DNA of 58,517 nucleotides, the filler included, from Platydemus manokwari (taxonomy: Eukaryota), in assembly GCA_037951405.1 (NCBI GenBank). It is 5 parts of 5 records of this genome, joined end to end, with 100 filler letters (N's around TTAATTAATTAA, not from the genome) between each part and the next. Parts side by side here need not be neighbours in the genome. Positions count along the whole stretch, not along the records: positions 26,564 to 40,076 come from JBBMOY011698066.1; 4 more parts are not named here. One strand, given 5' to 3'. This document shows, one piece after another, positions 2,000 through 40,076 of this stretch. Position 1 is the first letter of the stretch; each line of letters starts with the position of its first letter. Both the position numbers and the translations under genes were made by a program. Below the pieces are notes generated by a model, which saw only the letters and a list, made by a program, of their open reading frames with translations, made no database searches and was not told the DNA's origin.

Positions 2000-4330
2000 A
2001 ACTATTGAAACCCTCTAAGACCAGCATCTCGGTTTATAGGAGTCGTCACTCATTTCCGAGCCAAAGAATCACAAAAAACAGTGCAAGCGATCATTGTTCA
2101 ATATCACCTTGGGGAGCTAATTATCCGCTCCAAAAACCCCCTCGACATTACGTGTGACATTTCCACAATGAAGAATACCAAGTCTAAGAAGAAGACTTAG
2201 TTGGGCAATGGGATGAACAATTATGTCGAAATGAAATCTTTAACCAGCACATTGTCGTAGGATACCAAGTCAACGATATCATCAAAGCTCTCGACATTCC
2301 CCACGAGGAAATACTCGGCATAAATGACCTCGCCAAAGCCGAATGTCTCGTCGATTACAAGCTCGACCTACGAAACCCGATCAAACTGAAATATCAAACA
2401 GAAAGTTTTATCCAACTTCCAACCTAAGGAAAGCCACACCTTTTGAGTAATTCAGAGGGGAGTGGAAACCATGCGAGCCATTTACAAATAACTCGACAAA
2501 AAATTGGTCAACCCATCTATCATTACAGCCACCCAACTCACCAAGGAAAAAGAAGCTGAAAAGGAACAGCATTCCCCTAGCCATCAGCTCATAAGCCAAG
2601 CCTGACAGTAAGTCAAAATTCCAGCCCGCCGATAAGGCAGAAAGCTAAACAAATCCGGCAACTATAGTCAAACCAACTAACACCTCACCATCTTTACACC
2701 AGAAGAACAAATATATCTAACCACTGACGAAAAAGATCGCCACACACCGGTGGAACAAAGAGATTCAAAATTCCTATGCCGAAACCGAAAAAAGCTGCGG
2801 AAAATAGTGAGATTGCGACCCAGCGACAGCTTAGCTATGTCCAAGTTCGACAACCCAATAAATTTTCTGGTACATACACCCGAAATAATCCGAGTAGAAG
2901 GATCCCGATATTATTCCATCGGTATTCTCTATATCAATCTAAAGGCAATCAACCTAAACCGCAAATTTCGAAACTGCTGAGAAAAACGGGAGTGGTCGAT
3001 TGACAGTTATTAACATTAATCGGCGTTGAAGCCACTATTGTAATGACATTTTTATTTTATCCGGCACTGTAGACACCATTTTATTGATATGTTATTGACA
3101 TTTTTATTCGTCATTGTAGTCACTATCCTGTATGTAAACAGAAACACTATATTAACCTGTTAATCATCTTTCTGTCACAAATAACTTCTCAGTCCTCACT
3201 TTCCTGTTCACATTTTTCGGGACGAAAAAACCTAAGAGGGGGGAGATATGTTAGGATCCAATTACGATTAACTTAAGAAATCTGTATTAGTCATCACACC
3301 TACCGGAAATTATATAACCTAAATATAATCGAAAATTCCAAAAATAAACATGACGTAATTTCTAAATTAATTACAAACCTAAAAATGGAATTTAAAAATT
3401 ACATTATTAGAAATAAATTCACAGATAGGTAAAAATAGAATTAAGTCATGACAAAAATAGAAAATTCATGATTGCCTAAGACAACAATAAGACACAGTAT
3501 ATAAGACCAACGATTTTTCGAACAAATGGCAATAGAATACAGGCACAAAAATACCGGTATTAAAATTACTTGAAAAGCTAATTACAATGAGCTGATTGTC
3601 AGAATAGCTATCGCTAATCCGAACAGTTACAAGCAAGAGAATCATTAGTCAGTGTGACAGATCAAGTACGATCCGAGAATCATGTACCAGTAAACAGCAG
3701 AAACTCCAGAACGAGCTGAATTATAACCAGTAGAGGTATACACCAAGTTGTTTAATAGTTTCATATCGTGTCGAAAAATTCGGTATTAAGTAATTGAACC
3801 TTCTTTTGCCTCCCACCTTTTTGTCATAGTTTTCATTCATTATACGGTTCACCCGTATCGTGGAACTTACCTTCTGGTTGAGTCAACACTTCGCCAGCTG
3901 TGTTCACACAATTATAGTAATCAACTTTGTAAATTATTTATTGTGATTATTTAAATTATACGTTTCAATTCATTTGTTTTATTGTTATTTATTATATATC
4001 TATTGATTTACAAATCGCAACCTAAATTACATCACACGAAACACAACAGATTATTTGGAGTCCGATCTGTAAACAACGAACGAGCAACTCGAAAATTAAT
4101 CATACCTCACCCCATTACAAATAACCAAAAAGTAATATATAAAAATCCAATAGTTTATATAATCCAATTGAAACCACCGGTAAATGTGAATTATATTTTG
4201 AATACCAAATTAATAATTATTAAACCGTGCTGCTAGTACTCCAGAACTAAATAAAACGACCACTTGAAGACAACTATCTTAAAACTTTACATGTGTTCAG
4301 AGATAAATTTAGCTGTTACCCAGGTAATAG
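2000..4330 (+). mobile_element. 3' end of a Ty3/gypsy-like LTR retrotransposon: GC-richer decayed internal region, polypurine tract and 3' LTR starting at 3249 (right end uncertain)
   Basis: ttttcgggacgaaaaaacctAAGAGGGGGGAGATA|TGTTAGG is a classic PPT (3234-3248) followed directly by TG. The upstream 1.2 kb is locally GC-richer with broken ORFs. Confidence 0.7.
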
Positions 4331-26563: not shown

Positions 26564-29311
26564 AATTACATCTTTGTCTCTTCGATCATACATTGGAACT
26601 TGAATTACACCATTTAATATGATATCAATATTATCGTTTGATTCTTTGCATTGTATTGATAACAGCCCTCCAAAAGCAAAAGAGAATGTTTTAAGTTCAT
26701 TTATCTTTAAACTTATACTCATTTTACTCCAAGGCCATTTATACCATGTTTCTCTATTAAAGGTGTCAAATAAATGATAATTCACATATAGATAACATGT
26801 TTCTGATTTCGATTTCGTGATTATTACAGACACATCCTTTCCCGGAGAAATGTATAAACCGAGTTGTGCAACCTCATCAGGAAATTTGAGATTTAGTTTC
26901 ATTCTTACTGAAAGATATTTGATATTATTAGATTGTACTATTCCAGGATAAAATGATACACCTGGTGCTATGAATTTATTTCCAAGGGGATTAAGTAACA
27001 ATATATTTATCAGAGCTATCATTTTTTTATCATTATTATTCGATATTGGATTGTCTAAACATGGAATGAGATATCTTACGTGGTGTAAATGAGCTTCAAA
27101 AAGTAATCTAATATATTTTTTAATATAATAATATTCCTTTTCTTCGAATTGATCTTTCAAAATATTTTCTTTCATAATATTAGAAATAATGTCTGAAACA
27201 GAAATCGCATTAGTTAGATTTGTTGAAGCATAACTCAATAAAACAACAAATGGGACAGTTTCTATTTCTAATGTTTTTGCAATCGTTATTTCTTCATTAA
27301 AATACTGATTTAGTGGCCAAATTCCTGATGCTGCAAATATTGATCGCAACTCAGAATGAAAGAGATCTTCTGTGTAACGATTATAAGCCCATGGTTTGAT
27401 TCCTATTATTATTCGAAGTCCACATTTCACCAAATTTAAAAGTAAATCAATAGCTTGTCTTCCTATTTTGTCATGAGGATTCCATATGAGAGGTGTAGTG
27501 AAAGATTGACCAGAACGCCTTTTAAGATCCAGTGTTTCTAGTAGGTTCACAGTCAATGTCAAAGGTGAAGTATTTTTTATTCCATAAACTAATTGAAAGA
27601 AATCTTTCAATTGACTGTGGAAATCTTTATTTACATAACCTTCAGAACCCATGAAACCTATTCGGCCTTGACCAATTTCTGATATAGCAAATATCACTTT
27701 ATTTTTACTTGTGACAGCATATGGGATAACATTATCTCCTAAAAGAAGAAAATTTCCAAAATTATTTATTGTAGGTATAGTTATGTTCTTGTTGTATCTC
27801 CTTCGTAGATATAAGTCTACCTAAATGAATTTTAAATCAATTTTAAATCAATTTTAAATAGCTTTGATTAATAAAAACTTAAAATAATTGTTCCATTATC
27901 GATACGTTATATTTTTATTTTATTAATAAATTCTATAAATATTTATTATTCATCTTTGGAATGAGAATTAAAAAGTAGAAATTCACCCGATATATACATT
28001 CATTAAAGATTTTATTGTATACTCCAAGTAATTTTTACCTCATAGATACCTTATTCATCACCTAAAAAATATAAATTACTTGGCTTTTATTATTGTAGAT
28101 TAAAAATACTCTTTAAATTATCGATAAGATTATCAGCAACTTTTGATTTGAAGTTGGCATATTATACAATTTATTATAAGAATTACTTTACATATTAAAG
28201 ATATTTAACTTTTCAAAATTATGTAAAAATCTTTTTCTTACTTTTTTATTATATTCTTCGAATACTTTTTTTGCTTCCCACTTTACTTCATATATTGTTC
28301 CCAGCTCATAAGCAGTTCTATAGCCAGTATGTGAAATAGGAGAAATGAAAATAAATGTTCGTAATGGTGATGTACAATTGTAAACAAGATGGATTTGACA
28401 TCTTCCTTCACTAATATCCGTTAATTGACAGAACTGAAATTCATTGAAATCATTCTGACATTTTAGATTGTAATCAGTGGACCACAGTGATGTTTTGCTT
28501 TCAATATCCGTGTCCCACAATTCTAAAATCAAATATTAATACTGGAATTACAAATAGAACGCAAAACTCTTATCTATCGAAACGAAGAAAATAGCGAATT
28601 GATAAACATTGTTTAATGTGATAAATTTTGTATTTCGTGGTATGTTTTTCAAATAATCTTCACCACCAAAATATTCGTTTTGTTTCAAAGTTTCTGTAAA
28701 AAATATTTACTTAAATATTCACGAGACAAGATTTCATCCACCTTTAACACATATGGGAACGTGACATTGCTCAGATATCGAATAACTCGTATCAATATAG
28801 CACCATGGACCAGATAATGAATTCGATGGATTTCGGCATTTGTTTCCAGCATCAATAATATTATTATCAGGAAATAAATTATCAGTATATAGAAATTGAT
28901 TATTCCATGGTTGACATTGCTTTTCAGATTTCGTAACATGTATATTACCGAAATATTCTACACCGGATTCGGTATCTTTACACCAATGTCGTTCTAATAT
29001 TAAAATCAATCAATAATTGATGATTTTGATATATATACCCTTATAACAGAAAGGAATATCACAATATTCCCACTCGATTGTATTTCTATCTATGAAACAC
29101 CAAGGACCATTTGGAAAACTTGTGGGATTTCTACAATACTCAGTGTTCAGGATCGAATCAATATTGTGATAATTATATATCATTTGATTTGATAGTAGAA
29201 GTTGATTCATTCTTCTCTTTGTCCAAGGGAGACATTTGTGTCTATATATCGTTTTGCTGACTTTACCAGCATATTCTCTACCGTGAGAAGTCAATTTGCA
29301 TTTTTCAATTT
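26564..29311 (-). CDS. Kringle-kringle-unassigned domain-TCAF/FAM115 (M60-like peptidase family) multidomain protein; exons 29311-29039, 28993-28742, 28693-28568, 28522-28242, 27820-26564 (3'-truncated by linker)
   Basis: Two complete kringles (C...G.EY.G.V..T.....C.PW...YCRNP...GPWCF...EYCDIPFC and the second equivalent). Frame-preserving GT-AG introns of 45, 48, 45 and 421 bp. Last exon has TCAF motifs FLLLGD..IP...VIFAISEIGQGRI, IIIGIKPWAY, APGVSFYPG, GLYISPG, W.KWP, FGGLLSI and I.LNGV.QVPMY. Confidence 0.8.
28742..28993 (-). CDS. Kringle domain exon 2
   Basis: WCKDTESGVEYFGNIHVTKSEKQCQPWN...NKCRNPSNSLSGPWCY...EQCHVPIC, with six Cys and phase 1-1 borders. Confidence 0.92.
29039..29311 (-). 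CDS. Kringle domain exon 1
   Basis: KCKLTSHGREYAGKVSKT...KCLPW...YCRNPTSFPNGPWCF...WEYCDIPFC, with phase 1-1 borders. Confidence 0.92.
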
Positions 29312-29555
29312 CTGAATTCTCTCAATTAAATATAGTTCTAGCATTATTATTATTATTATTATTATTAAAATAATTTTTATAAATTACATAAACAAATGGT
29401 AGACATTCTCCATTTTTCTATTGGCATTTATGATAAATATTTTATATTCTTATTTCAATAGCTGTATTTGAAGATTCTTCTTTAATAAATTAAAAAAGAA
29501 AGATTAAATCGAAACAATATGCAGACGATATTTAATCAGTACGACAACTTAATAC

Positions 29556-29658
29556 CAAATGATTATGATATACACAAAGTAGTCATTTGGACGGTCAAAC
29601 TAACTATTATTAAATGCCCAACGCTGATATTCCTAAAATAAATTCTTGTTATTCTCAT
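29556..29658 (-). other. Candidate signal-peptide exon of the kringle-TCAF gene, with an in-frame TAA at 29565-29563
   Basis: MRITRIYFRNISVGHLIIVSLTVQMTTLCIS*SF followed by a phase-1 G|GTATTA donor that would join kringle exon 1 in frame. Confidence 0.35.
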
Positions 29659-30419
29659 AATTATTAAGATTCTTTAATCAAATATTTAGTAATTCCAACA
29701 ATAGTTTCATCAATATATTTAATTTACTCAGTTTATACATTTCCAAATATTATTTATTTTACATAAATTCTATTATAAAAATCAATTGACAATCCATATC
29801 AATATCTTCGAAGTCATTATTGCCATCTCAAATATTAAATTCATGATTTAATTATAAAAGTACTCAACACTGTTTAAGGTATATTTTTATTATTTGATTT
29901 TTCAAGATAACCCAATCTCGAAATAGAAATGAAAGACTGAAGAAATTAATTATGAAAATTACTTTTATAACCAATCACTGGGATTTATTTTATGTTTAAT
30001 TCAATGGATAAATAGAAAACATCTCAATTTAAACTGTAACTACTTAAGGAATGAATAATTAACGAATCATTTGTATGGTCGATATTATCCATAGGCATGT
30101 TTTTGTCAAACAAATGATTGGAAATGGTTCTGAAATATATTTATTTAAAAATCTATATATCCACCTGTGAGAAATGTTGCCAACGAATTACCACAGAAAA
30201 GTAGGATCAAAATTAAAATAATTTTCATTGAAATTTTGAAAATTTTCATTTGCATTTGTGTTATATAATTCTTATAAAATCTTATGTAAATTTGATGCAG
30301 TATAAAACATTATTTTCAGTTAGAAATTTAAAATATTCTCGAAATATGATCAAAATTAACACTGTATTTATTTACATAAATCGCTAAGGATTTGTTAGAA
30401 GAATAATTTTAGTTAAATT

Positions 30420-30551
30420 TGATATTATTATTAATAATAATAATGATAATAATACAATAAAAACATCAATAATAATATTATTATTATAGTAGTAATAATG
30501 ATAATAATAATGATAATAATAATAATAATGTTGATAATAATAATAATATAA
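30420..30551. repeat. (AAT)n-type microsatellite
   Basis: Imperfect AAT/GAT triplet run directly before the LTR. Confidence 0.9.
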
Positions 30552-33020
30552 TGTTGGTCTACCTGCTGTAGAGCGCAACAAATACTCTCTAGATCCTATC
30601 TATCTGACTCAAAATAAATAAGAGTTGAAGCACTAAGACGTATTTTTAAAACAACTTTACAGATCGTTCGTTAATATGACGGTAAAAACACAATCAGGTG
30701 TTCAATTCTTATATTCAAGTGAATACATGGAACTAGTCTGCTCACAAAGTTGGGCTACCAGCCGAGGAGCTACCTCTGGCATATAGTACAATACTAGTGT
30801 CAGCAAAGACAGTTACGGACGTACTACTCTAACTCTCTTTGTTTTACCGATATTCGGAAGCAACAACCTCGATCATCCTACTTTTCTACACTTAAACTAA
30901 TATTCTGGAAACAATTTCCAAGAATATTTTACTGCAAAAGAATTATTAAACAGTAATTAAATAACATGCTTTCGCTCCGCGTAATTTCCAAATAAAATCC
31001 TTTTATGTAAATTTTCTGATTGTAATAAATAATTTTCTTGGGTTTCTTTCCTCCTAGTTTATCCTGTGTTCTAATGACTGTGATAATCAACTATTGATTG
31101 CCTTTATATAAAATACCGCAGTTTTGAACATCGGGTAAAGAAGCTAGTTTCCGAAGTGTTTAACAAGAAAAACACTCTTGCAGAAATTTCAAGATTATTT
31201 ATTCTGTAAGGTCTAAATAGCAAGAAATTGAAAGAGTCATTTACTCTCGATCCTGCAATGTTTGACGATAGAAGAAGAGAGCTAGTTGTCAATTTTGAGA
31301 AGTTAACTACAACAAAGTGTAAAGGAATATCATCGAGCACCAGTTAATCACATTGAATCTCCAAACAATGCGAAATCAACAAGATCAATGAAATCTATTG
31401 CTTCTAAATTTTACAACGATTGGAGAGGAAATCTTACACCACATGGTGACTATTTGAAACCAGGAGCTTGTTTTTACTGTGGTGAGCTTGGACACCGGAA
31501 GTCTGAATGTCCACTGCGGAATAAATTTTTGAATTGCGGATAAGAAGATAATGTCATTTAGCCCGAAAGCCTAGTTAAAATAATTTGACGAAAATACTAG
31601 ACATCTATGACGAAGAAGATGAAGCTGATATTCAAACCAAAGTGAAGTAAGTGATTGTGTTATCTCACTGTCCATGGAGGAGAAAAAATGAAATCAACCT
31701 CCTGTACCTATCAAGTCAGTGGAGTTGAGTCAATAGAACACATATCAGCAAGAGATAGAATAGAAGTAAACAAGGAAGAGAGTAAGAGGAAGAGGAAACA
31801 TTCACAGATGTTTTAGAAAGCATATGGTAGACAGTGGAGTAAAATTGAGCGCAACGGAACGCATATTGATATGTTATGGGATTCTGGTGCATCAATAACA
31901 GTAATGAATGAGAGCAATTGGAGGCGCATTGTAGAGCCGCAAATTAAAAATTCTGAAGTTTGATTGGCTGGTATATTCTCCAATGCAGACAAATCGTGTC
32001 TAGGAAAAATAAGGATTTCAATAGTTTGGAACAACGAAATTCTGTAAAGGAGATCATTGTAGTAAAACAAATTTCACCAGGATTTATCGGAGTAATTGAT
32101 ATGATGAAGGCTAGTAGAAAATTCCTTGCAGTGATAAAATCAATGGATTCCAAAGATATAGAAATGAAATTGCACTGAAAAGTATTGATAATAAGAATTA
32201 TATTTCTTTGAATAGGTGTATAAAGAAAATGGCTCAATTTTTATGGCTTCTCGGTTCGATTTGGGATAACAGATTTGGTGAAGCACGAGATCCGTACAAA
32301 ATGTAAACCTATTTCTCAGAACCCCAGAAGGCAGCCAATAAATTTAGAAACCATAATTCAAGAATTGATAGAAAATCTTCTCGAAAGTAATGTCATAACA
32401 CCTTGCAAGAGCTTTTGAAACTCTCCTTTGGTCGCGGTTCCTAAGAAAGATGGATCGATCAGGGTGTGTTTAGACTTCAGAAAGTTAAATGAACAGACTG
32501 AGAAGTTTTCTTTTCCGGTACCTGACATTCAAACTTTATTGGACTCAGTGTATGTAGCGACTATTTTCTCCACAATAGATTTAGACCAAGCATACTATCA
32601 GGTCGAAGTTGAGGAAGATTCTAAATTGTAAACGGCGTTTAGCACGAGAATTGGCTATTTCTGTTTTAACAGACTACCTGGAAAATTTTAGAGTCTAATG
32701 AATACGATGTTCAAGGTTTTGATTTACAAAAGCGTTCTTGTTTATCTGGACGATATTTTAGTCTATGGAAGAACAGTAGAAGAAAAGAGTGAGAAACTCG
32801 AAAAGGTATTCAGGTTGATTAAATCATCAGGTTTGAAAATCAATCCGGAGAAATGCATTTTCGGCACTAGAAAATTGAATTTCCTGGGTCATACAGTCAG
32901 TGCAGAAAGTATAGAAACTAATAATAACAAAGTTAAGAAGATTAAGGAAGTAATTAAACCTGGTTGTATCACTCAGTTGAGGTCGTTTATAGGTTCAAGC
33001 AATTATTACAGAAGATTTAT
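30552..33020 (+). mobile_element. Defective Ty3/gypsy LTR retrotransposon: putative 5' LTR 30552-30727, PBS-like TGG at 30728, gag zinc knuckle, aspartic protease, RT; truncated before RNase H/integrase
   Basis: TGT...ACA-bounded 176 bp followed by TGGAACTAG. CFYCGELGHRKSECP (~31468), MLWDSGASITV (~31871-31903), VPKKDGSIRVCLDFRKLN and YLDDILVYG. Multiple stops and frameshifts; the FGLCTAP segment is deleted. Confidence 0.92.
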
Positions 33021-36000
33021 TTATATTTATATCTGATATAATTATTATTATTTATATTATTATGGCTACTGGAGCTACTAAATTCTTATAAATAAATTAA
33101 TAAAATCATTTTTACTTTTTTCGTATTTTTACTTAAAATACAAAATGCATTCTTTATTTATTTGGCATAAGGTTTCACTTTTTGAATATGTTTTATATAT
33201 AATTAATTAATAATTCTGGATTTCCCACCTTGATTCCCAAATTACTATTAATTTTTTAATATAGCCTTAACCGCATAAATGCTTCCCTAAATATTTCTAA
33301 AACTATATCGAGTATTTTATTTTTTATAATTGATTTCGAATAATATCATTTCTGTATTGATCATTGGTTACTTATTAATTAATACAGTAATGATGATAAG
33401 ATTTTGTCACGATTTATTTCCATTCTGATATACAACAATATTATAAACTGTATTCTGTTCAAGTAACTGAAAATATAAGTGACTAGCTTTAAATTTCATA
33501 ATCATATATTATTAAGCTATTCTGTTGATTAAATATGGTATGTACATGTATTTTTATTTGCTATTATTAAATCTTTCTTAGAAAAGGAATTCTAAAAAAT
33601 ATGAAATGTTTAAAATAGAATTTTCAAAATTATGTGTTCAACTATCGAACTAGGAATATAAATATGCATTATAAACGTCATTAGGAGAATTTTTACAATA
33701 TCAATATTATATTTAATTTAATAATTTACAATTCAAAAATCGAAATGTATAAAAAGATTTCTCAAGGTTAGACAATACATAATATACGTGGGCAGAAATG
33801 TTTCTCTTTGACAAAGAGAAGATTGAAGCAACTTTTACAATCAAATCTAACGATAAATAACTATTACAATCATAATTTGATTTTAAACACCGGTTGCTGT
33901 AGAAATCCCACCATTTTGAATAAATTTATGTAAAACGAAATTTTGGGCTATAAACGTGATTTGGAATTACACGATTCTAATAATGCCATAGTCAAAATTT
34001 CTGGTGAAGTGTCATTTATACTAAATGAAAGAAAATTTTGAAAAATGTGTAGTTTTGAAATTTGAGTTGTTGTAAATATCACTTTAATATCCACAGTAAC
34101 AACATATATAATTAAATTGTCATGCGATAGAATAAAATTTCAGTAATAATACGTAATCAGTATTACAAGTTTTTATCTTCTATGTGATAGTAAATAGATG
34201 TTGATCAAAATCAATAATAAAAATTGGTAACTATCTGGAATGAATCTTTTATAAAATTTAATTTTCATCGTGGTTATTTAAAATTTAATTTTAAAGATCT
34301 TAATATTATAAAAATCTCAGTATTATCAATAAATAAGTGGTAGGAATTGGATATAGATCGTACTTTCGTAGTTAAAATTAATGAGCCCAATAGTCCACTG
34401 TATCTCACTTCATATATATAAACCATATTCATTATAATATACGAATACTGTGCATCATATCTATAAATTATTATCTCCACTTATTTTAAAAATTTTAAAA
34501 TTGAAAGAGAGAAAGCTGAAAATAGTAAGTATTAACAATAATTATAAAAACTTTTATTAAAAAAAGATTAATTTAACGAAAAGATGAACGGTTTTTACAT
34601 TTTATCAAACCAAATTTTGTGACCAAGCAGCTGAATTTAATGAAATGATTAGATTTTCTAAAATTAAAATAAAATAATTTAAACTTATTAGGAAGAAGAT
34701 TTCCTCAGAATATCAGAACTCGTCTGAATAATGATTTGAAGGATAATAGTGAAAACTTTTGAAAATTGAAGCTCACAAATTTGGAACTGAGATAATATTA
34801 TTTACGAAATAGATGTGATACGACTGTTTAATAGTAAATATTGATAACTGTATAGATATTTTCAAGTTAATAATAGATTTAATTAGCAAAATATTGAAAG
34901 GGAGGGCTGGTTTCTAACTCTTTTAATTTTTAATCTGAATATAAGCTCTCCTTGTACTTTTGAAAATATTTAAATGTTCTTTGTAATTATCCTATGTAAA
35001 TCGATCACAGTTAAAATTATCTAATTTAGTAACATAATAAATGAAAACCCCCAAGCAATTTTATATATAAATCTACTAATTTATATCATTAAATACCTCC
35101 GACATATTTTTACAATTTCGTTTGTTTAAATTTTTATTCTCACCTTAAAAATATAACTTTCAAATTATTAGTTAATATAGTTAATTTAAACCGATCGAGA
35201 ATGCAAACTTAATTCACCATTTAAATGTAAATATTCAATGCATCTATTAGATCCATAAAAACAGTCTAATTGTGGATTCGAGAAAGTATAATAACTCGTC
35301 TTTTACTGTCAATAATGTCTGTATCATGAAGAATGAGACGAAACTAAAATTTATTTACAAGATATTTGAAAATTAACTTTTTTTAAAGTTCATAGATTAA
35401 TTGAGATTAATTTGTCGGTAATTAAATATTAGTAGATAAACAAATTAAAAGTAATGTATTTTCATCACTCTAAATTGCTTTTCGTTGAAGATAAAAAGTT
35501 GACTCGTTTTTAATCAAGTTATTTAAATATTTAGATTTAAAAGAAATTAGCATTATTTGATGTTGTTTATTTTAAATATGGCGGGATTTCATTTTGTTAT
35601 ATTAAACAAGTTTTTGTTATTAGACTATCGGTCACTGATTTTGTTTTGCCACAAGGGGTCTTCTTTGTTAAAAATGAGTAGTACCAAAGGATTTATATTT
35701 ATCGAAATATTTTATAGCTTATCTGAAATTATAATTGTGTAATCTGTACAAAATTTATTTATATACGATTCTTACTTGAGATATACGATCAATTATCATA
35801 CACGAATAAATGTATGATTTATTAATGATTTTAATCCGATGCCGAATAAATGAGATGAGAACCATGAGTGCATTTAATAAACGTATATTTTTTAATTTGT
35901 TCGCTTTTTTGAAAAATAACTTAATTTTTAAGAGCTATTATTTTTAATTTGAGAAGAAAAGATTTAGAGTTTGATCTGGAATAAAACAAATAAGTCAAAG

Positions 36001-36199
36001 TATTAAGTCTGGCTTAGAAATTTGAAAGATTAAAAGCAAGTGAGAACAGCGAACACTATTATCTTTGGTCTCACTTATATAAGCATTTAAGGTGGATTTG
36101 TATTGCTTAAGTTCAATATTTGTTATTATTATCTCTTTCTCAATTTCAGCAGAAATTATAAATATTAACCATCAAAATTTTGATCACAAATCAATAAAT

Positions 36200-37420
36200 A
36201 ATGTTTCGCGTTGTAATGATAATTGTTATTTCGTAGGATAATTGTATGATATTTGATTCAGTTTCGAATAATATAACAATTCTTTGGAATGTCTGTTGAA
36301 TGAAATTCTTTCTTTGTTAATTGCACGGACTTTAGACACCACTTTTCGTATTGCTCAAAGCTCAAAAGAGAATAATTATGGAGCTGGGTATAATTCAGTA
36401 ATGTTTCTTGTAGTGTTCTGTAATAAAAGAACAGCATTTTCAGTCTCAACCAAATCTTGTTTGGAATGGAATTGATTGGATTGAATTTGTAGAAAATGGA
36501 TGAGTCTAGCATGTTGGTGTTATTGCTGTAACTTCTGTAACCTCCAAGTCTCACACACTAGAAACGCTTATAAGCACGTCAATTTGGTGATGGTCTCAGA
36601 TCCTAATAAAGTATATTGAGATATACCTGACAAACTTCTGCACACTACTTTCTGTAATGTTAATGACTTGAAGTACATTGAACGTCAATTGAGATATCAA
36701 GTCAATTGATCCAACAATGATTGTTTGAAATCCATTAATCCATTCTGAAATTTGAGCAATTATCTAATCAACACAAATTAAAAAGTCATTTAGTTATCAC
36801 GTAGCTGGAAAGTGAGATTAATTTATGAAACACAAAAATACATAACTTATATTATCGACTCTAAATAGAAAATGCAAATCGACATTTTATTTTGTGGATG
36901 TCCTTTTTAGAAATGAGTCAATTGACGAGCAGTTTAATGAGTCTAGCATAATGGGTAAAGGGTGATGAAGTCATTATAAACGATATGATGGAATCTGACT
37001 TTTTGACCAATAATATGTAATAATTGGTTTTAATTGTTATTCGTAAGCTAATTACGCAAATTTGAATCGGCAATAGGTCGACTAACGATGTGCATCATCT
37101 ATTGTTTTCATTTTTCAAAGAATCATTCATGGCAATATGAAATTTGTTATTTTCACTATCAAACCCCTTGATAAGTATGTGCTTAATCTTTAATTAATTA
37201 ATAGCTTTGACTACTCTATGTTGCTGTGAGTTCTCGGCTGTAGGTGTAAAAGAGATTCAAGAGTTAGATTGACTTATTGGATCGAGCTGTCAAACGATGG
37301 ATTCAATTTAATTGGTAGTCAGATACTATATTAACCCACAAATCTCATAAATTAACGCCATAATTAATGGTATCGATATACAAATACAATATATGATAAT
37401 AACAGCATTGGAGACATAAA
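36200..37420 (-). mobile_element. Decayed gypsy pol (RNase H-integrase) remnant
   Basis: TYSRELTA (~YS..ERELLA) and AVLLLQNTTRNITELYPA (~VLL..NTT...T...PA, integrase core). Confidence 0.5.
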
Positions 37421-38580
37421 ATCTTCGTGACTAACCCTCTCAAATAAGAACTGAGAACATCTAAAATTAAAAAATTTCGTGTTGAAATATAATGGTCCTA
37501 GTATCAGGAATTAAAATAGCGTAGCACAATGTATAATACTGGTAAATTGTGTTACGACATGAAGTAGGATCTGAGCTCCAATTTTTTTAATTAGGACAGT
37601 ACTTGTTTCTCTTTGTGCAAATAACTTAATAAACGATTTCGAAACTTGGTTCTGTTGTATCATTATTTGTGATATAAGTCGACATTTTTATTAAAAGGTT
37701 TAAACTTTTTCTTTAGTGTGAAATGGATAAGGTGATTGGAGTCAGATAATACGACAAAATTAAGTTCTTTGTAGCCCAGAGTTAATAAAATTAAATGAAA
37801 AATATAATAAAAATATGCATTTATTGTTGTCGTGCTTAAGAAGTTCCGTACATCGAATATGACTGGTAATTATCTCAGAATGATTCTATTTTATTATTCA
37901 TTTTAAAAAGTTTATGTCATTCAAAGAATATGTTTTTATTCATCAAATTAATATTTTCCATTCCTAATAAAATTAATAAGTTTAAATCAATGAAGTATGA
38001 ACGATTGATTTATACCTCCACTAAGTCATATTTTAATTAGTTTATGAGCTCCAACTTTTTGAAAACATTACCGTTTTATGGCTTATTATTTCATCAACGT
38101 GAAACAATATGAAGAATAACCATTCTAATAATCAATATTTTTTTTCATAAAATATTGTCATTTATATTGACGACAAATATTACCAGCATTGATTGAATGA
38201 CATTTTTCAATCAAAACCATAGTTAATGAGTAAATATTTGATATAAAATCATAATAGATAATCTGAAAAATAAAAAAGACCATTAATAAGATATACACAT
38301 TAATTTTTCAAAGCTTTTATTGATATTGAGAGTAGCAAAAGCTAATAATCTCATTTCAATCAAAGATTTTATTGTGACATAATTCAGTGTGATTTCTATG
38401 ATGAATGGGTTAGTAGCTTTGGTTGGAATCAACAACTAATTATTATCAATAATAAATTGAAAAATATCAAAATTAATAATGATATTTATGAGAGATATTT
38501 ATAAATTTTCGATACACGGTTCTTTCAACACAGTACAGTTTTCTACATTTTTAATACATGGCTCAATAATATATAATTAT

Positions 38581-39392
38581 TTGTTGTTTGTGTTTTGTTA
38601 ATGTTACTATGGTAATGATAAGAATAGATTCAATACGAAGATAATAATAGATATTTATTTCATAAACATGATCGGATCCACGGTAGTTAGCATTTTCATT
38701 GCATAAATCAGTTAAAAGATCAAAACCTTCGCTCACTACGATAGACTGTTCCAAGATGAAACTTTAATTTTTTAAAAATTCTTTCCATTATATGTGTTAT
38801 AATCTACGAAATCCTAACGTTATCCAGATGTCATCGTTAGTCTGAATACTCCAAGATTAAAATACTAAATCAACCTCAAAAGTGAGAAATTCGACTACTC
38901 ACTCAAGTCTTGTTTTTTAATGGACTTTCTCAATTCCTCGTATTTCTTTTGTTAGCATCTTTCATGAGCCTGACCTCATTCATTGGTCATTTGATATCGT
39001 TAAGATAGATTGTTGATATTCGTTCATCTTTTTTTTGAAAATCAATTCTTTCTCCTCAAAAGCTTTACAATTGAGGTTATGGCTAATTTTCCTTTTTTCC
39101 TTGTCAGTATATTCATGATTTCGTTGTAACGGAGAATGGATGTGCATGGTGAAAAGTTTAATTTTTTTGTACATGGGTTTGAAATATCATATTATGAAAA
39201 GAGTTATAAAAAATTAAAGTTTCACTTTGGAAGAGTCTATCATAGTCAGCGAAGGTTTTGATCTTTTAACTGATTTATCCAATGAAAATGCCTTGGATTT
39301 GACCATGTTTATGAAATAAATATTTTTTATTATTTCCTTACTGAATCTATTTTTATCGTTACCACAGTAACATAAACAAACCATAGACAATA
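38581..39392. mobile_element. Non-autonomous element with ~190-bp inverted repeats (38581-38774 / 39207-39392), Mutator/foldback-like
   Basis: rc of the left arm aaaaaattaaagtttcatcttggaacagtctatcgtagtgagcgaaggttttgatcttttaactgatttatgcaatgaaaatgc matches the right arm aaaaaattaaagtttcactttggaagagtctatcatagtcagcgaaggttttgatcttttaactgatttatccaatgaaaatgc. Confidence 0.8.
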
Positions 39393-40076
39393 AACAACCG
39401 TGAATTTTGTGGATCTCAATATTTTGAATGTGCTTTGGTTACATTTTAGAACATTTCTTATTATACTTTATGATCTTATGAACATTTCTTAAAAACCTTT
39501 GTGGACTCCCACGTCACATGGATCAGATTTAGAACTCCCACTCTGAAGATCTAATCTGTTCTCAAGCTTTTAAAACAACAATATGCTAAATTTATTTACT
39601 AAATAACATTAAAAATATTTTTTTCTAAATTAAGTAATATTTAATATCATATATTTTGTGTTTCAAATAATCTTGGAAACCTTTCCAATTCAATATCACG
39701 AAAAGATTGAGACTTTTTATTCAAGATAATTTCGGTTCTTAAGTTTTGATAATTTAGTTGCTTAATAATCCTATAGCAGCTTCATTGTTTATTTAATGTT
39801 AGATTCACATCATTAACTCAATTATTTTAGCTATTTTTGATGTATTTTCTACTTCATCAGTCCTCTAAAAACGTCGACTCATTATTATTTGACATTCACA
39901 AATCGTATGCTTTAGCGTAATATTTGTCTGTGGTAGCTACCTCATTAAAATTTTAAAATTCTTAAAAAATTGATTATTAAAAACTTAACTTTTAAACAAG
40001 TTAAAATATTTACAAGAAAGTTTTAATTATTAAATATCTTGATGAGAAATATATTTAAATTATTCAAAACTTATTT

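What the first reader, a model, noticed from the sequence alone, without database searches (positions are those of the whole stretch)
26564..29658. Plasminogen-like kringle modules fused to a TCAF/M60-family metallopeptidase region instead of a trypsin domain
Seen: four separate ORF-track entries plus one short exon missing from the track join through GT-AG introns into one reading frame, giving kringle, kringle, a ~135-aa unassigned domain, a TCAF N-terminal repeat and an M60-like N domain. Established: kringles normally accompany serine proteases or receptor kinases (plasminogen, HGF, ROR); vertebrate TCAF1/2 lack such extracellular modules; M60-like/enhancin peptidases of microbes and baculoviruses cleave mucin O-glycoproteins. 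Inference: an animal-encoded secreted, ligand-targeted glycopeptidase (or catalytically dead binder) for mucus turnover, digestion or defence. I do not know of a characterised protein with this architecture.
Basis: partly seen in the sequence, partly recalled or inferred. Interest (0 to 1): 0.8.

Follow-up and report, generated by a model that had tools for sequence, protein, structure and literature searches.

The report
Kringle-bearing TCAF/M60-like peptidase gene
A minus-strand gene in an AT-rich, intron-bearing genome joins a likely signal peptide and two kringle modules to the front half of a TCAF/IMPa-type M60-like metallopeptidase. This domain combination is real but very rare, has not been characterised, and was probably built by exon shuffling.

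Summary
Four exons on the minus strand (29311-29039, 28993-28742, 28522-28242 and 27820-26564, the last cut by the piece's edge) join through GT-AG introns into one open frame. Pfam finds two kringles (E 1e-16 and 6e-14) and M60-like_N (E 5e-7).

The spliced product aligns without a single gap, at 47% identity over 626 residues and across all three junctions, to one database protein, P0001. P0001 continues into a Peptidase_M60 domain with HEVGH.

A model of the large exon (pLDDT 85) matches the pre-catalytic region of the Pseudomonas O-glycoprotease IMPa (Foldseek E 1e-15). A phase-compatible signal-peptide exon lies about 0.9 kb upstream.

An exhaustive HMMER search gave only two relatives below E 1e-30, and only P0001 has a kringle. 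No paper describes the combination.

Limits:
- No RNA data exist.
- The catalytic domain lies beyond the piece's edge.
- The kringles lack the canonical lysine-binding acidic pair.
- The roughly 95-aa middle domain stays orphan.
- The organism is unidentified.

Best reading: a secreted, kringle-tipped M60-like glycoprotein peptidase or binder. The architecture is solid; the function is inferred. It is a new variant of a known kind, of moderate interest.

The parts
30165..30255 (-). Candidate exon 1: start codon plus signal-peptide-like sequence (MQMKIFKISMKIILILILLFCGNSLATFLT). It ends in phase 1 at donor CAG|GTGGAT; an alternative phase-1 donor GTG|GTAATT ends the exon at 30192.
   Evidence: This is the only one of 15 ATG-to-phase-1-donor candidates within 2 kb upstream of kringle 1 that has a fully hydrophobic 10-residue core. 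It joins in frame to exon 2. Inferred; there is no RNA evidence.
29039..29311 (-). Exon 2: kringle 1. It is 273 nt, phase 1-1, with six cysteines. An alternative in-frame acceptor lies 9 nt upstream at 29320.
   Evidence: Pfam PF00051 E 1.4e-16, covering about 29046-29291. AG/GT flanks. Its C-terminal part aligns to residues 1-30 of P0001.
28994..29038 (-). Intron of 45 nt between the two kringle exons, GT...AG.
   Evidence: The junction is colinear with P0001.
28742..28993 (-). Exon 3: kringle 2. It is 252 nt, phase 1-1, with six cysteines.
   Evidence: Pfam PF00051 E 6.1e-14, covering about 28749-28970. It aligns to the kringle of P0001.
28523..28741 (-). Intron of 219 nt. It holds an open frame (28551-28706) that could be spliced in frame but has no counterpart in P0001.
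28242..28522 (-). Exon 4: orphan 'mid' domain of 94 aa with 4 Cys. It starts in phase 1 and ends in phase 0.
   Evidence: No Pfam hit and no Atlas hit. It is 43% identical to P0001 residues 117-232. A weaker counterpart follows the signal peptide of P0007. Its fold was not predicted with confidence (pLDDT below 50).
27821..28241 (-). Intron of 421 nt, GT...AG.
   Evidence: The junction is ungapped against P0001. P0002's contig L001 shows ttttag immediately before the equivalent position.
26564..27820 (-). Exon 5, cut off by the piece's edge: 419 codons without a stop. It encodes a linker, one TCAF_N-like alpha/beta domain (about 27296-27763), a helical domain (about 26993-27253) and the M60-like_N beta-sandwich (about 26633-26860).
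   Evidence: Pfam M60-like_N. Atlas TCAF_N clusters score 0.95-0.96. Identity is 50% to P0001 and 39% to P0002. The AlphaFold model has pLDDT 84.7 and pTM 0.83. It matches IMPa 5kdv at Foldseek E 9.8e-16 and TMq 0.62, and at VIA Z 11.5 over 387 residues. The beta-sandwich matches BT4244, ZmpB, AM0627 and 5ev7 at Z 8.7-9.6.
33784..33917 (+). Relic of a kringle-1 exon in inverted orientation.
   Evidence: It is 77% complementary to 29116-29249 over 134 nt and 58% identical at protein level over 43 aa.
33954..34139 (-). Degenerate relic of the start of the TCAF_N-like exon.
   Evidence: tblastn gives 35% identity over 80 aa with an 18-aa deletion, E 4e-6.

Best explanation
One minus-strand gene encodes a secretory-pathway protein. 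In order it has a signal peptide, kringle 1, kringle 2, an orphan Cys-containing domain of about 95 aa, one TCAF_N-like alpha/beta domain, a helical domain and the M60-like_N beta-sandwich. Beyond the piece's edge, and by analogy with its two close homologues, a Peptidase_M60 zinc-metallopeptidase domain should follow. The kringle modules sit in symmetrical phase 1-1 exons between the signal-peptide exon and the ancestral body. This is the signature of exon shuffling into a secreted member of a very divergent TCAF/IMPa-like branch. The most likely mechanism, which is inferred, is an extracellular M60-type peptidase acting on glycoproteins, as IMPa, BT4244 and ZmpB do on O-glycosylated substrates. 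The two kringles would serve as protein-binding or anchoring modules for an unknown ligand that is not lysine. Shown: the domains, the exon structure and its conservation. Inferred: secretion, catalytic activity, substrate and kringle role.
For: Kringle x2 and M60-like_N lie above the Pfam thresholds. The frame is open and all introns are GT-AG. The spliced product aligns ungapped to P0001 over 626 aa at 47% identity, across the K1/K2, K2/mid and mid/TCAF junctions. P0001 carries Kringle, M60-like_N and Peptidase_M60 with HEVGH; P0002 carries HEIGH...DEVT, which aligns to the HEVGH...GEVT of the solved M60-like protein 4fca. P0007 has a signal peptide, a mid-like segment and a TCAF_N-like segment in one uninterrupted ORF, so mid and TCAF belong to one secreted protein in a relative. 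Neither the mid exon nor exon 5 shows a start codon with a signal peptide of its own. There is a single signal-peptide-like, phase-compatible upstream exon. The model of the window's own exon matches IMPa's pre-catalytic region and the beta-sandwiches of several M60 O-glycopeptidases. In other copies of exon 5 in the DNA run, 13 of 27 listed differences are synonymous against 21% expected (p 0.002) and none is a stop. Window, P0001 and P0002 form a clade with 100/100 support.
Against: There is no RNA evidence at all: the only run holding the stretch is DNA and shows no splice joints. P0001 is itself a predicted protein of unknown organism, so its junctions are not independent proof of splicing. 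The catalytic domain is not in the window. In P0001 the position of the third zinc ligand is Asp rather than Glu, and about 35 residues holding the conserved GxMHxGYP block are missing, so loss of activity in this clade is possible. If the donor after kringle 2 is not used, the frame stops two codons later, so a kringle-only product is formally possible. Both kringles lack the acidic pair of lysine-binding kringles.
Confidence: 0.6

Rival explanations
1. The gene and architecture are the same, but the protein is a catalytically dead binder (a pseudo-peptidase). The M60-like scaffold and the kringles would then only bind glycoproteins or matrix.
For: P0001 has Asp where P0002 and 4fca have the Glu third ligand, and it lacks the GxMHxGYP segment. 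[quoted passage not shown] Vertebrate TCAFs act as channel partners with no shown peptidase activity (PMC4284226).
Against: HExxH is intact in both close homologues. The gap in P0001 may be a gene-model error. The window's own catalytic region is unseen.
Confidence: 0.22
2. These are two neighbouring genes wrongly joined: a small secreted two-kringle protein (exons 1-3, ending by read-through two codons after kringle 2) and a separate TCAF-like gene.
For: The frame stops two codons after the kringle-2 donor if the intron is retained. There is no RNA evidence. Most relatives have no kringle.
Against: Neither exon 4 nor exon 5 has a start codon with a signal peptide of its own. All phases match. 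Order, orientation and exact junction positions are conserved with P0001 at only 47% identity, without a gap.
Confidence: 0.1
3. This is a decaying or non-functional copy in a repeat-rich, rearranged region.
For: Relics of a kringle exon and of the TCAF_N exon, and a broken retroelement, lie within 7 kb. Several diverged copies of exon 5 exist in the DNA run.
Against: The model has about 710 codons without a stop in 27% GC DNA, and all splice sites are intact. Synonymous differences are in excess among the copies.
Confidence: 0.06
4. It is an intracellular TCAF-type ion-channel partner, as in vertebrates.
For: It is homologous to TCAF homologues (Patella P0004, E 2e-12).
Against: It has a signal-peptide-like exon and two disulphide-rich kringles, and only one TCAF_N-like repeat instead of two. 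It sits on a very long separate branch.
Confidence: 0.02

Closest known systems
P0001 (UniParc UPI0005FFB7D8; uncharacterised predicted protein, organism unknown to me)
   Same: It has the same order of kringle, kringle, mid domain, TCAF_N-like and M60-like_N. It aligns at 47% identity without gaps over 626 aa and continues into Peptidase_M60 with HEVGH.
   Different: It comes from another species or is a distant paralogue. It is truncated at the N-terminus inside kringle 1. It has Asp at the third-ligand position and a gap of about 35 aa before HExxH. It has not been characterised.
IMPa, the immunomodulating metalloprotease of Pseudomonas aeruginosa (PDB 5kdv, 5kdx, 7jtv)
   Same: The whole 419-aa exon product superposes on IMPa's pre-catalytic N-terminal, helical and beta-sandwich domains (Foldseek E 1e-15, TMq 0.62; VIA Z 11.5 over 387 residues). 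IMPa is a secreted enzyme, solved in complex with an O-glycopeptide.
   Different: Identity is only 13-14%. The window sequence has no Pfam IMPa_helical or IMPa_N_2 hit. IMPa is bacterial and has no kringles. The catalytic domain could not be compared for the window.
Vertebrate and mollusc TCAF (TRPM8 channel-associated factor) proteins, e.g. Patella vulgata XP_050415374.1 (P0004)
   Same: They share the TCAF_N-like, helical, M60-like_N and Peptidase_M60 layout.
   Different: TCAFs have two TCAF_N repeats and no kringles. Identity is about 22-26%. The window's clade is separated by a branch of 2.2 substitutions per site.
Bacterial M60 O-glycopeptidases (BT4244, ZmpB, AM0627, BcM60s) and the Bacillus anthracis M60-like protein 4fca/5ev7
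   Same: The M60-like_N beta-sandwich matches at Z 8.7-9.6. Homologue P0002's catalytic domain aligns to 4fca at E 2e-15, including HExxH and the downstream Glu.
   Different: The bacterial enzymes pair the catalytic domain with carbohydrate-binding modules (CBM32, CBM51, BACON), not with kringles.
Plasminogen / HGF / prothrombin / ROR kringles
   Same: They share the fold family and the six-Cys pattern. The kringle of P0001 hits plasminogen and HGF chains at E 1e-44 to 1e-53 summed over their kringles.
   Different: No PAN, trypsin or kinase domain was found in the exons present. The CRNP-T-S-F and CRNP-S-N-S sequences replace the CRNP-D-x-D acidic pair of lysine-binding kringles. This comparison uses the standard kringle numbering from memory.

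Membership tests
Kringle (PF00051) | Profile match above the Pfam gathering score | tested here: met
   61 and 52.5 bits against a cutoff of 34.3
Kringle (PF00051) | Six conserved cysteines (three disulphides) with the CRNP and GPWC motifs | tested here: met
   Read from the translations. Both modules have 6 Cys, CRNP and GPWC.
Lysine-binding kringles (plasminogen K1/K4 type) | Acidic pair Asp55/Asp57 after CRNP, plus basic residue 71 | tested here: not met
   K1 has T55, F57 and E71. K2 has S55, S57 and I71 (sequence; numbering from established knowledge).
M60-like / Peptidase_M60 (PF17291 + PF13402) | N-terminal beta-sandwich (M60-like_N) | tested here: met
   Pfam E 5.4e-7, 30 bits against a cutoff of 23. 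Structural match to BT4244, ZmpB, AM0627 and 5ev7 at Z 8.7-9.6.
M60-like / Peptidase_M60 (PF17291 + PF13402) | Catalytic Peptidase_M60 domain | not testable with these tools
   It lies beyond the piece's edge at 26564. It is present in the homologues P0001 (E 3e-29) and P0002 (E 1e-39).
M60-like / Peptidase_M60 (PF17291 + PF13402) | Gluzincin-like motif HEXXHX(8,28)E (PMC3267712) | not testable with these tools
   It is not in the window. P0002 has HEIGH...DEVT aligned to 4fca HEVGH...GEVT. P0001 has HEVGH with Asp at the aligned position.
TCAF (TRPM8 channel-associated factor) | TCAF_N-like domain | tested here: met
   Atlas TCAF_N clusters score 0.95-0.96 with 195-197 shared features. Structure search gives TCAF_N clusters at TM 0.5-0.57 (on P0001). 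Alignment motifs are shared. The local Pfam scan gave no TCAF_N hit.
TCAF (TRPM8 channel-associated factor) | Two tandem TCAF_N repeats and no extracellular modules | tested here: not met
   There is one repeat only. The place of the first repeat is taken by kringles and the mid domain.
TCAF (TRPM8 channel-associated factor) | Binding to and regulation of a TRP channel | not testable with these tools
   This needs an experiment.
IMPa-type metalloprotease | Fold of the pre-catalytic N-terminal, helical and beta-sandwich region | tested here: met
   Foldseek E 9.8e-16, probability 1.00. VIA Z 11.5 over 387 aligned residues.
IMPa-type metalloprotease | Pfam IMPa_N_2 / IMPa_helical profile match | tested here: not met
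   No such hit at E up to 0.1.
Kringle serine proteases (plasminogen/HGF type) | PAN/apple domain and C-terminal trypsin-like domain | tested here: not met
   The exons present give only Kringle and M60-like_N. The full homologue P0001 gives Kringle, M60-like_N and Peptidase_M60.

The most novel reading that the evidence does not exclude
This is a eukaryote-encoded (probably invertebrate), secreted IMPa/M60-type O-glycoprotein peptidase. It acquired two kringle modules by exon shuffling and uses them to dock on a protein ligand. That would make it an endogenous 'targeted mucinase' for mucus or matrix turnover, digestion or defence. The long intron-less catalytic exon could additionally mark a laterally acquired or retro-copied peptidase gene that captured host signal-peptide and kringle exons.
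Probability: 0.3. Interest if true: 0.6.

Novelty: new variant of a known kind. Interest (0 to 1): 0.42.

Why it matters
M60-like peptidases are known as microbial and viral tools that cut host mucins and other O-glycoproteins. The animal members (TCAFs) are known only as intracellular channel partners with no shown enzymatic role. A secreted eukaryotic member carrying kringles would be a clean natural example of exon shuffling onto a glycoprotein peptidase scaffold. It would also be a candidate host-encoded mucin-type protease, and a new partner domain for kringles beyond serine proteases and receptor kinases. It is testable with ordinary expression and cleavage assays. The limits are that the branch is tiny (two kringle-bearing sequences, this window and P0001, plus the incompletely sampled P0002), the organism is unknown and no function is shown.

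Tried and rejected
1. Word-index protein searches were blank or uninformative. They used exon 5, whole P0001 (flooded by plasminogens) and P0001 residues 116-640 (found only itself).
2. Only one run holds the stretch, and it is DNA: its contigs cover introns and show no splice joints. The junctions could therefore not be tested on transcripts.
4. The ORF at 28551-28706 was considered as an extra exon, because an in-frame acceptor and donor exist. I rejected it as a constitutive exon because P0001 passes from kringle 2 to the mid domain without it. An alternative exon is not excluded.
5. Other first-exon candidates upstream of kringle 1 were rejected. The nearby ATG at about 29411 gives a stop when joined, and 9 further candidates lack a hydrophobic core.
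6. The mid domain gave no Pfam hit and no Atlas hit. AlphaFold confidence was below 50, with only weak cystatin/NTF2-like matches at Z about 5. I make no fold claim.
7. The tree could not place the clade among animal or bacterial relatives, because deep forks are unsupported, branches are long and most taxa are unknown. No claim on origin or lateral transfer is made.
8. P0002's lack of kringles is not informative. Its contig L001 begins 153 nt upstream of an acceptor-like ttttag|ATG at the position equivalent to 27820, so it probably shows only the last exon.
9. Rfam and tRNA scans of the piece found nothing.
10. The organism could not be identified with the available tools.
Full report
**The piece.** The range 26564-40076 is 22-37% GC and has no N. 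No tRNA or Rfam family is present. The finding lies on the minus strand at its low-coordinate end, and the gene runs off the piece's edge at 26564.

**Observation.**
- Pfam finds a kringle in window:29013-29321:- (E 1.4e-16) and another in window:28737-29009:- (E 6.1e-14).
- Pfam finds M60-like_N at residues 300-375 of window:26564-27757:- (E 5.4e-7, above the gathering score). The 114-aa ORF between them has no family.
- Reading the minus strand and checking by script gives four exons: 29311-29039, 28993-28742, 28522-28242 and 27820-26564. Each is flanked by AG and GT. The introns are 45, 219 and 421 nt, and there is no stop in the joined frame.
- Both kringle exons are symmetrical phase 1-1 modules of 273 and 252 nt.

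**One gene or two?** No transcript data exist. The only public run that holds the stretch is DNA: its contigs cover the introns and show no splice joints. The test therefore had to be comparative.
- An exhaustive HMMER search of 1.84 billion representatives with exon 5 gave only 37 hits at E up to 1e-3, and two below 1e-30.
- The best hit, P0001 (919 aa, UniParc UPI0005FFB7D8, no name), contains Kringle, M60-like_N and Peptidase_M60.
- The spliced window model aligns to P0001 over 626 residues at 47% identity without one gap. The alignment runs from inside kringle 1 through kringle 2, the orphan domain and all of exon 5, and so across all three junctions.
- P0001 is itself a prediction. Even so, exact conservation of order, spacing and frame at this divergence is hard to explain unless the exons are translated together.
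- Neither exon 4 nor exon 5 has a start codon with a signal peptide of its own.
- A more distant relative, P0007, carries a signal peptide, a mid-like Cys-containing segment and the TCAF_N-like domain in one uninterrupted ORF. The mid domain therefore belongs with the TCAF-like body in a secreted protein.
- P0002 (39% identity) starts exactly at the position equivalent to 27820, directly after ttttag in its contig. It probably represents the last exon only. It shows that in this clade one long exon encodes everything from the linker to the end of the peptidase domain.

**Secretion.** I scanned the 2 kb upstream of kringle 1 for ATG-initiated segments that end at a GT donor in phase 1. There were 15 candidates. 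Only those at 30255/30249/30228 have a fully hydrophobic core (MKIILILILLFCGNSLA...), with good donors at 30192 or 30165. Joined to exon 2 this gives an open frame of 709 or 718 codons. This is inference, but it fits the disulphide-rich kringles and the signal peptide of P0007.

**What exon 5 is.**
- Language-model features put it with TCAF_N + M60-like_N clusters (scores 0.96 and 0.95).
- Alignment with TCAF homologues shows the shared motifs (G-x-G-R..., the W, GG-x-L...PWG). It also shows that canonical TCAFs, such as the Patella 'TRPM8 channel-associated factor homolog' P0004, have a second upstream copy of this domain. The window protein has the kringles and the mid domain there instead.
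- An AlphaFold model of the window's own 419 residues is confident (pLDDT 84.7, pTM 0.83).
- The model matches the pre-catalytic region of the Pseudomonas aeruginosa metallopeptidase IMPa: Foldseek E 9.8e-16, probability 1.00, TMq 0.62; VIA Z 11.5 with 387 aligned residues.
- Its last domain matches the beta-sandwich of the M60 O-glycopeptidases BT4244, ZmpB, AM0627 and 5ev7 at Z 8.7-9.6.
- The equivalent part of P0001 gives the same answer.

**The mid domain.** It was not modelled with confidence (pLDDT below 50), has no Atlas look-alike and stays orphan.

**Catalysis.** The peptidase domain is not in the window.
- In P0002 the domain is complete (Pfam E 1e-39). It aligns to the solved M60-like protein 4fca with HEIGH...DEVT opposite HEVGH...GEVT. 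This fits the HEXXHX(8,28)E motif of the family (PMC3267712).
- P0001 keeps HEVGH but has Asp at the aligned Glu position. It also lacks about 35 residues holding the conserved GxMHxGYP block. This may be a gene-model error or real decay.
- Activity in the window's protein is therefore plausible but open.

**Kringles.** Both have the six cysteines, CRNP and GPWC. The acidic pair that binds lysine in plasminogen kringles is replaced (T/F in K1, S/S in K2) and position 71 is not basic. This is my reading with the standard numbering. They are kringles by family but probably not lysine binders, and their ligand is unknown.

**Selection and copies.** The DNA run holds several versions of exon 5 at 90-99% identity. 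Of the 27 listed differences, 13 are synonymous against 21% expected by chance (p 0.002), and none creates a stop. This fits a functional reading frame present as diverged alleles or paralogues.

**Rarity and novelty.**
- Among the 37 relatives only P0001 has a kringle.
- No Atlas cluster of 50 or more members shown combines Kringle with M60 families.
- Full-text searches for kringle with M60-like or with TCAF found nothing relevant.
- Window, P0001 and P0002 form a clade with 100/100 support on a very long branch. Its position among animal and bacterial relatives is unresolved.
- The architecture is thus already present in one unannotated database entry but is uncharacterised. I rate it a new variant of a known kind.

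**Most likely function (inferred).** It is a secreted M60-type glycoprotein peptidase, or if the active site has decayed, a binder. IMPa-like pre-catalytic domains would help hold the substrate, and the N-terminal kringles would tether the protein to an unknown protein ligand. A vertebrate-type intracellular TCAF role is unlikely, given the signal peptide and the kringles.

Noticed in passing
33784-33917 (+) and 33954-34139 (-): Two degenerate relics of this same gene family lie 4.5 kb upstream. One is a kringle-1 exon fragment in inverted orientation (77% nucleotide complementarity to 29116-29249). The other is a fragment of the start of the TCAF_N-like exon with an 18-aa deletion. Together they suggest an old inverted duplication that decayed.
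   Followed up: partly
31388-33036 (+): A broken retroelement sits here: a zf-CCHC zinc knuckle (E 3e-7) and two RVT_1 fragments (E 1e-7 and 3e-12) in separate short ORFs. GC is about 35% against about 25% around it.
   Followed up: partly
38577-38785 and 39196-39397: A long imperfect inverted repeat (arms of 112 and 96 nt, 81-90% complementary, 410-597 nt apart). It may be a foldback or MITE-like element.
   Followed up: no
26564-27747: In the one DNA run that holds the stretch, exon 5 is covered by several contig versions at 90-99% identity, with summed depth about 3-4 times that of the upstream exons. These are diverged alleles or extra paralogues of the peptidase exon without equally many kringle exons.
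   Followed up: partly
29326-29391 and 30414-30559: ATT/TAA-rich simple tracts flank the first intron. The reads tool skipped them as repeats.
   Followed up: no
P0001 residues ~680-700 versus P0002 residues ~490-535: P0001 lacks about 35 residues that include the family-wide GxMHxGYP block just before HExxH. It also has Asp where P0002 and 4fca have the Glu zinc ligand. This is either a gene-model error or decay of the active site.
   Followed up: partly
L002 (Logan DRR639838), 562-1848 and 3011-3178: P0007 is a truncated gene call. A further piece similar to the helical / M60-like_N region lies about 1.2 kb downstream on the same contig, so the contig is genomic or unspliced. Its product has a clear signal peptide and no kringle.
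   Followed up: partly
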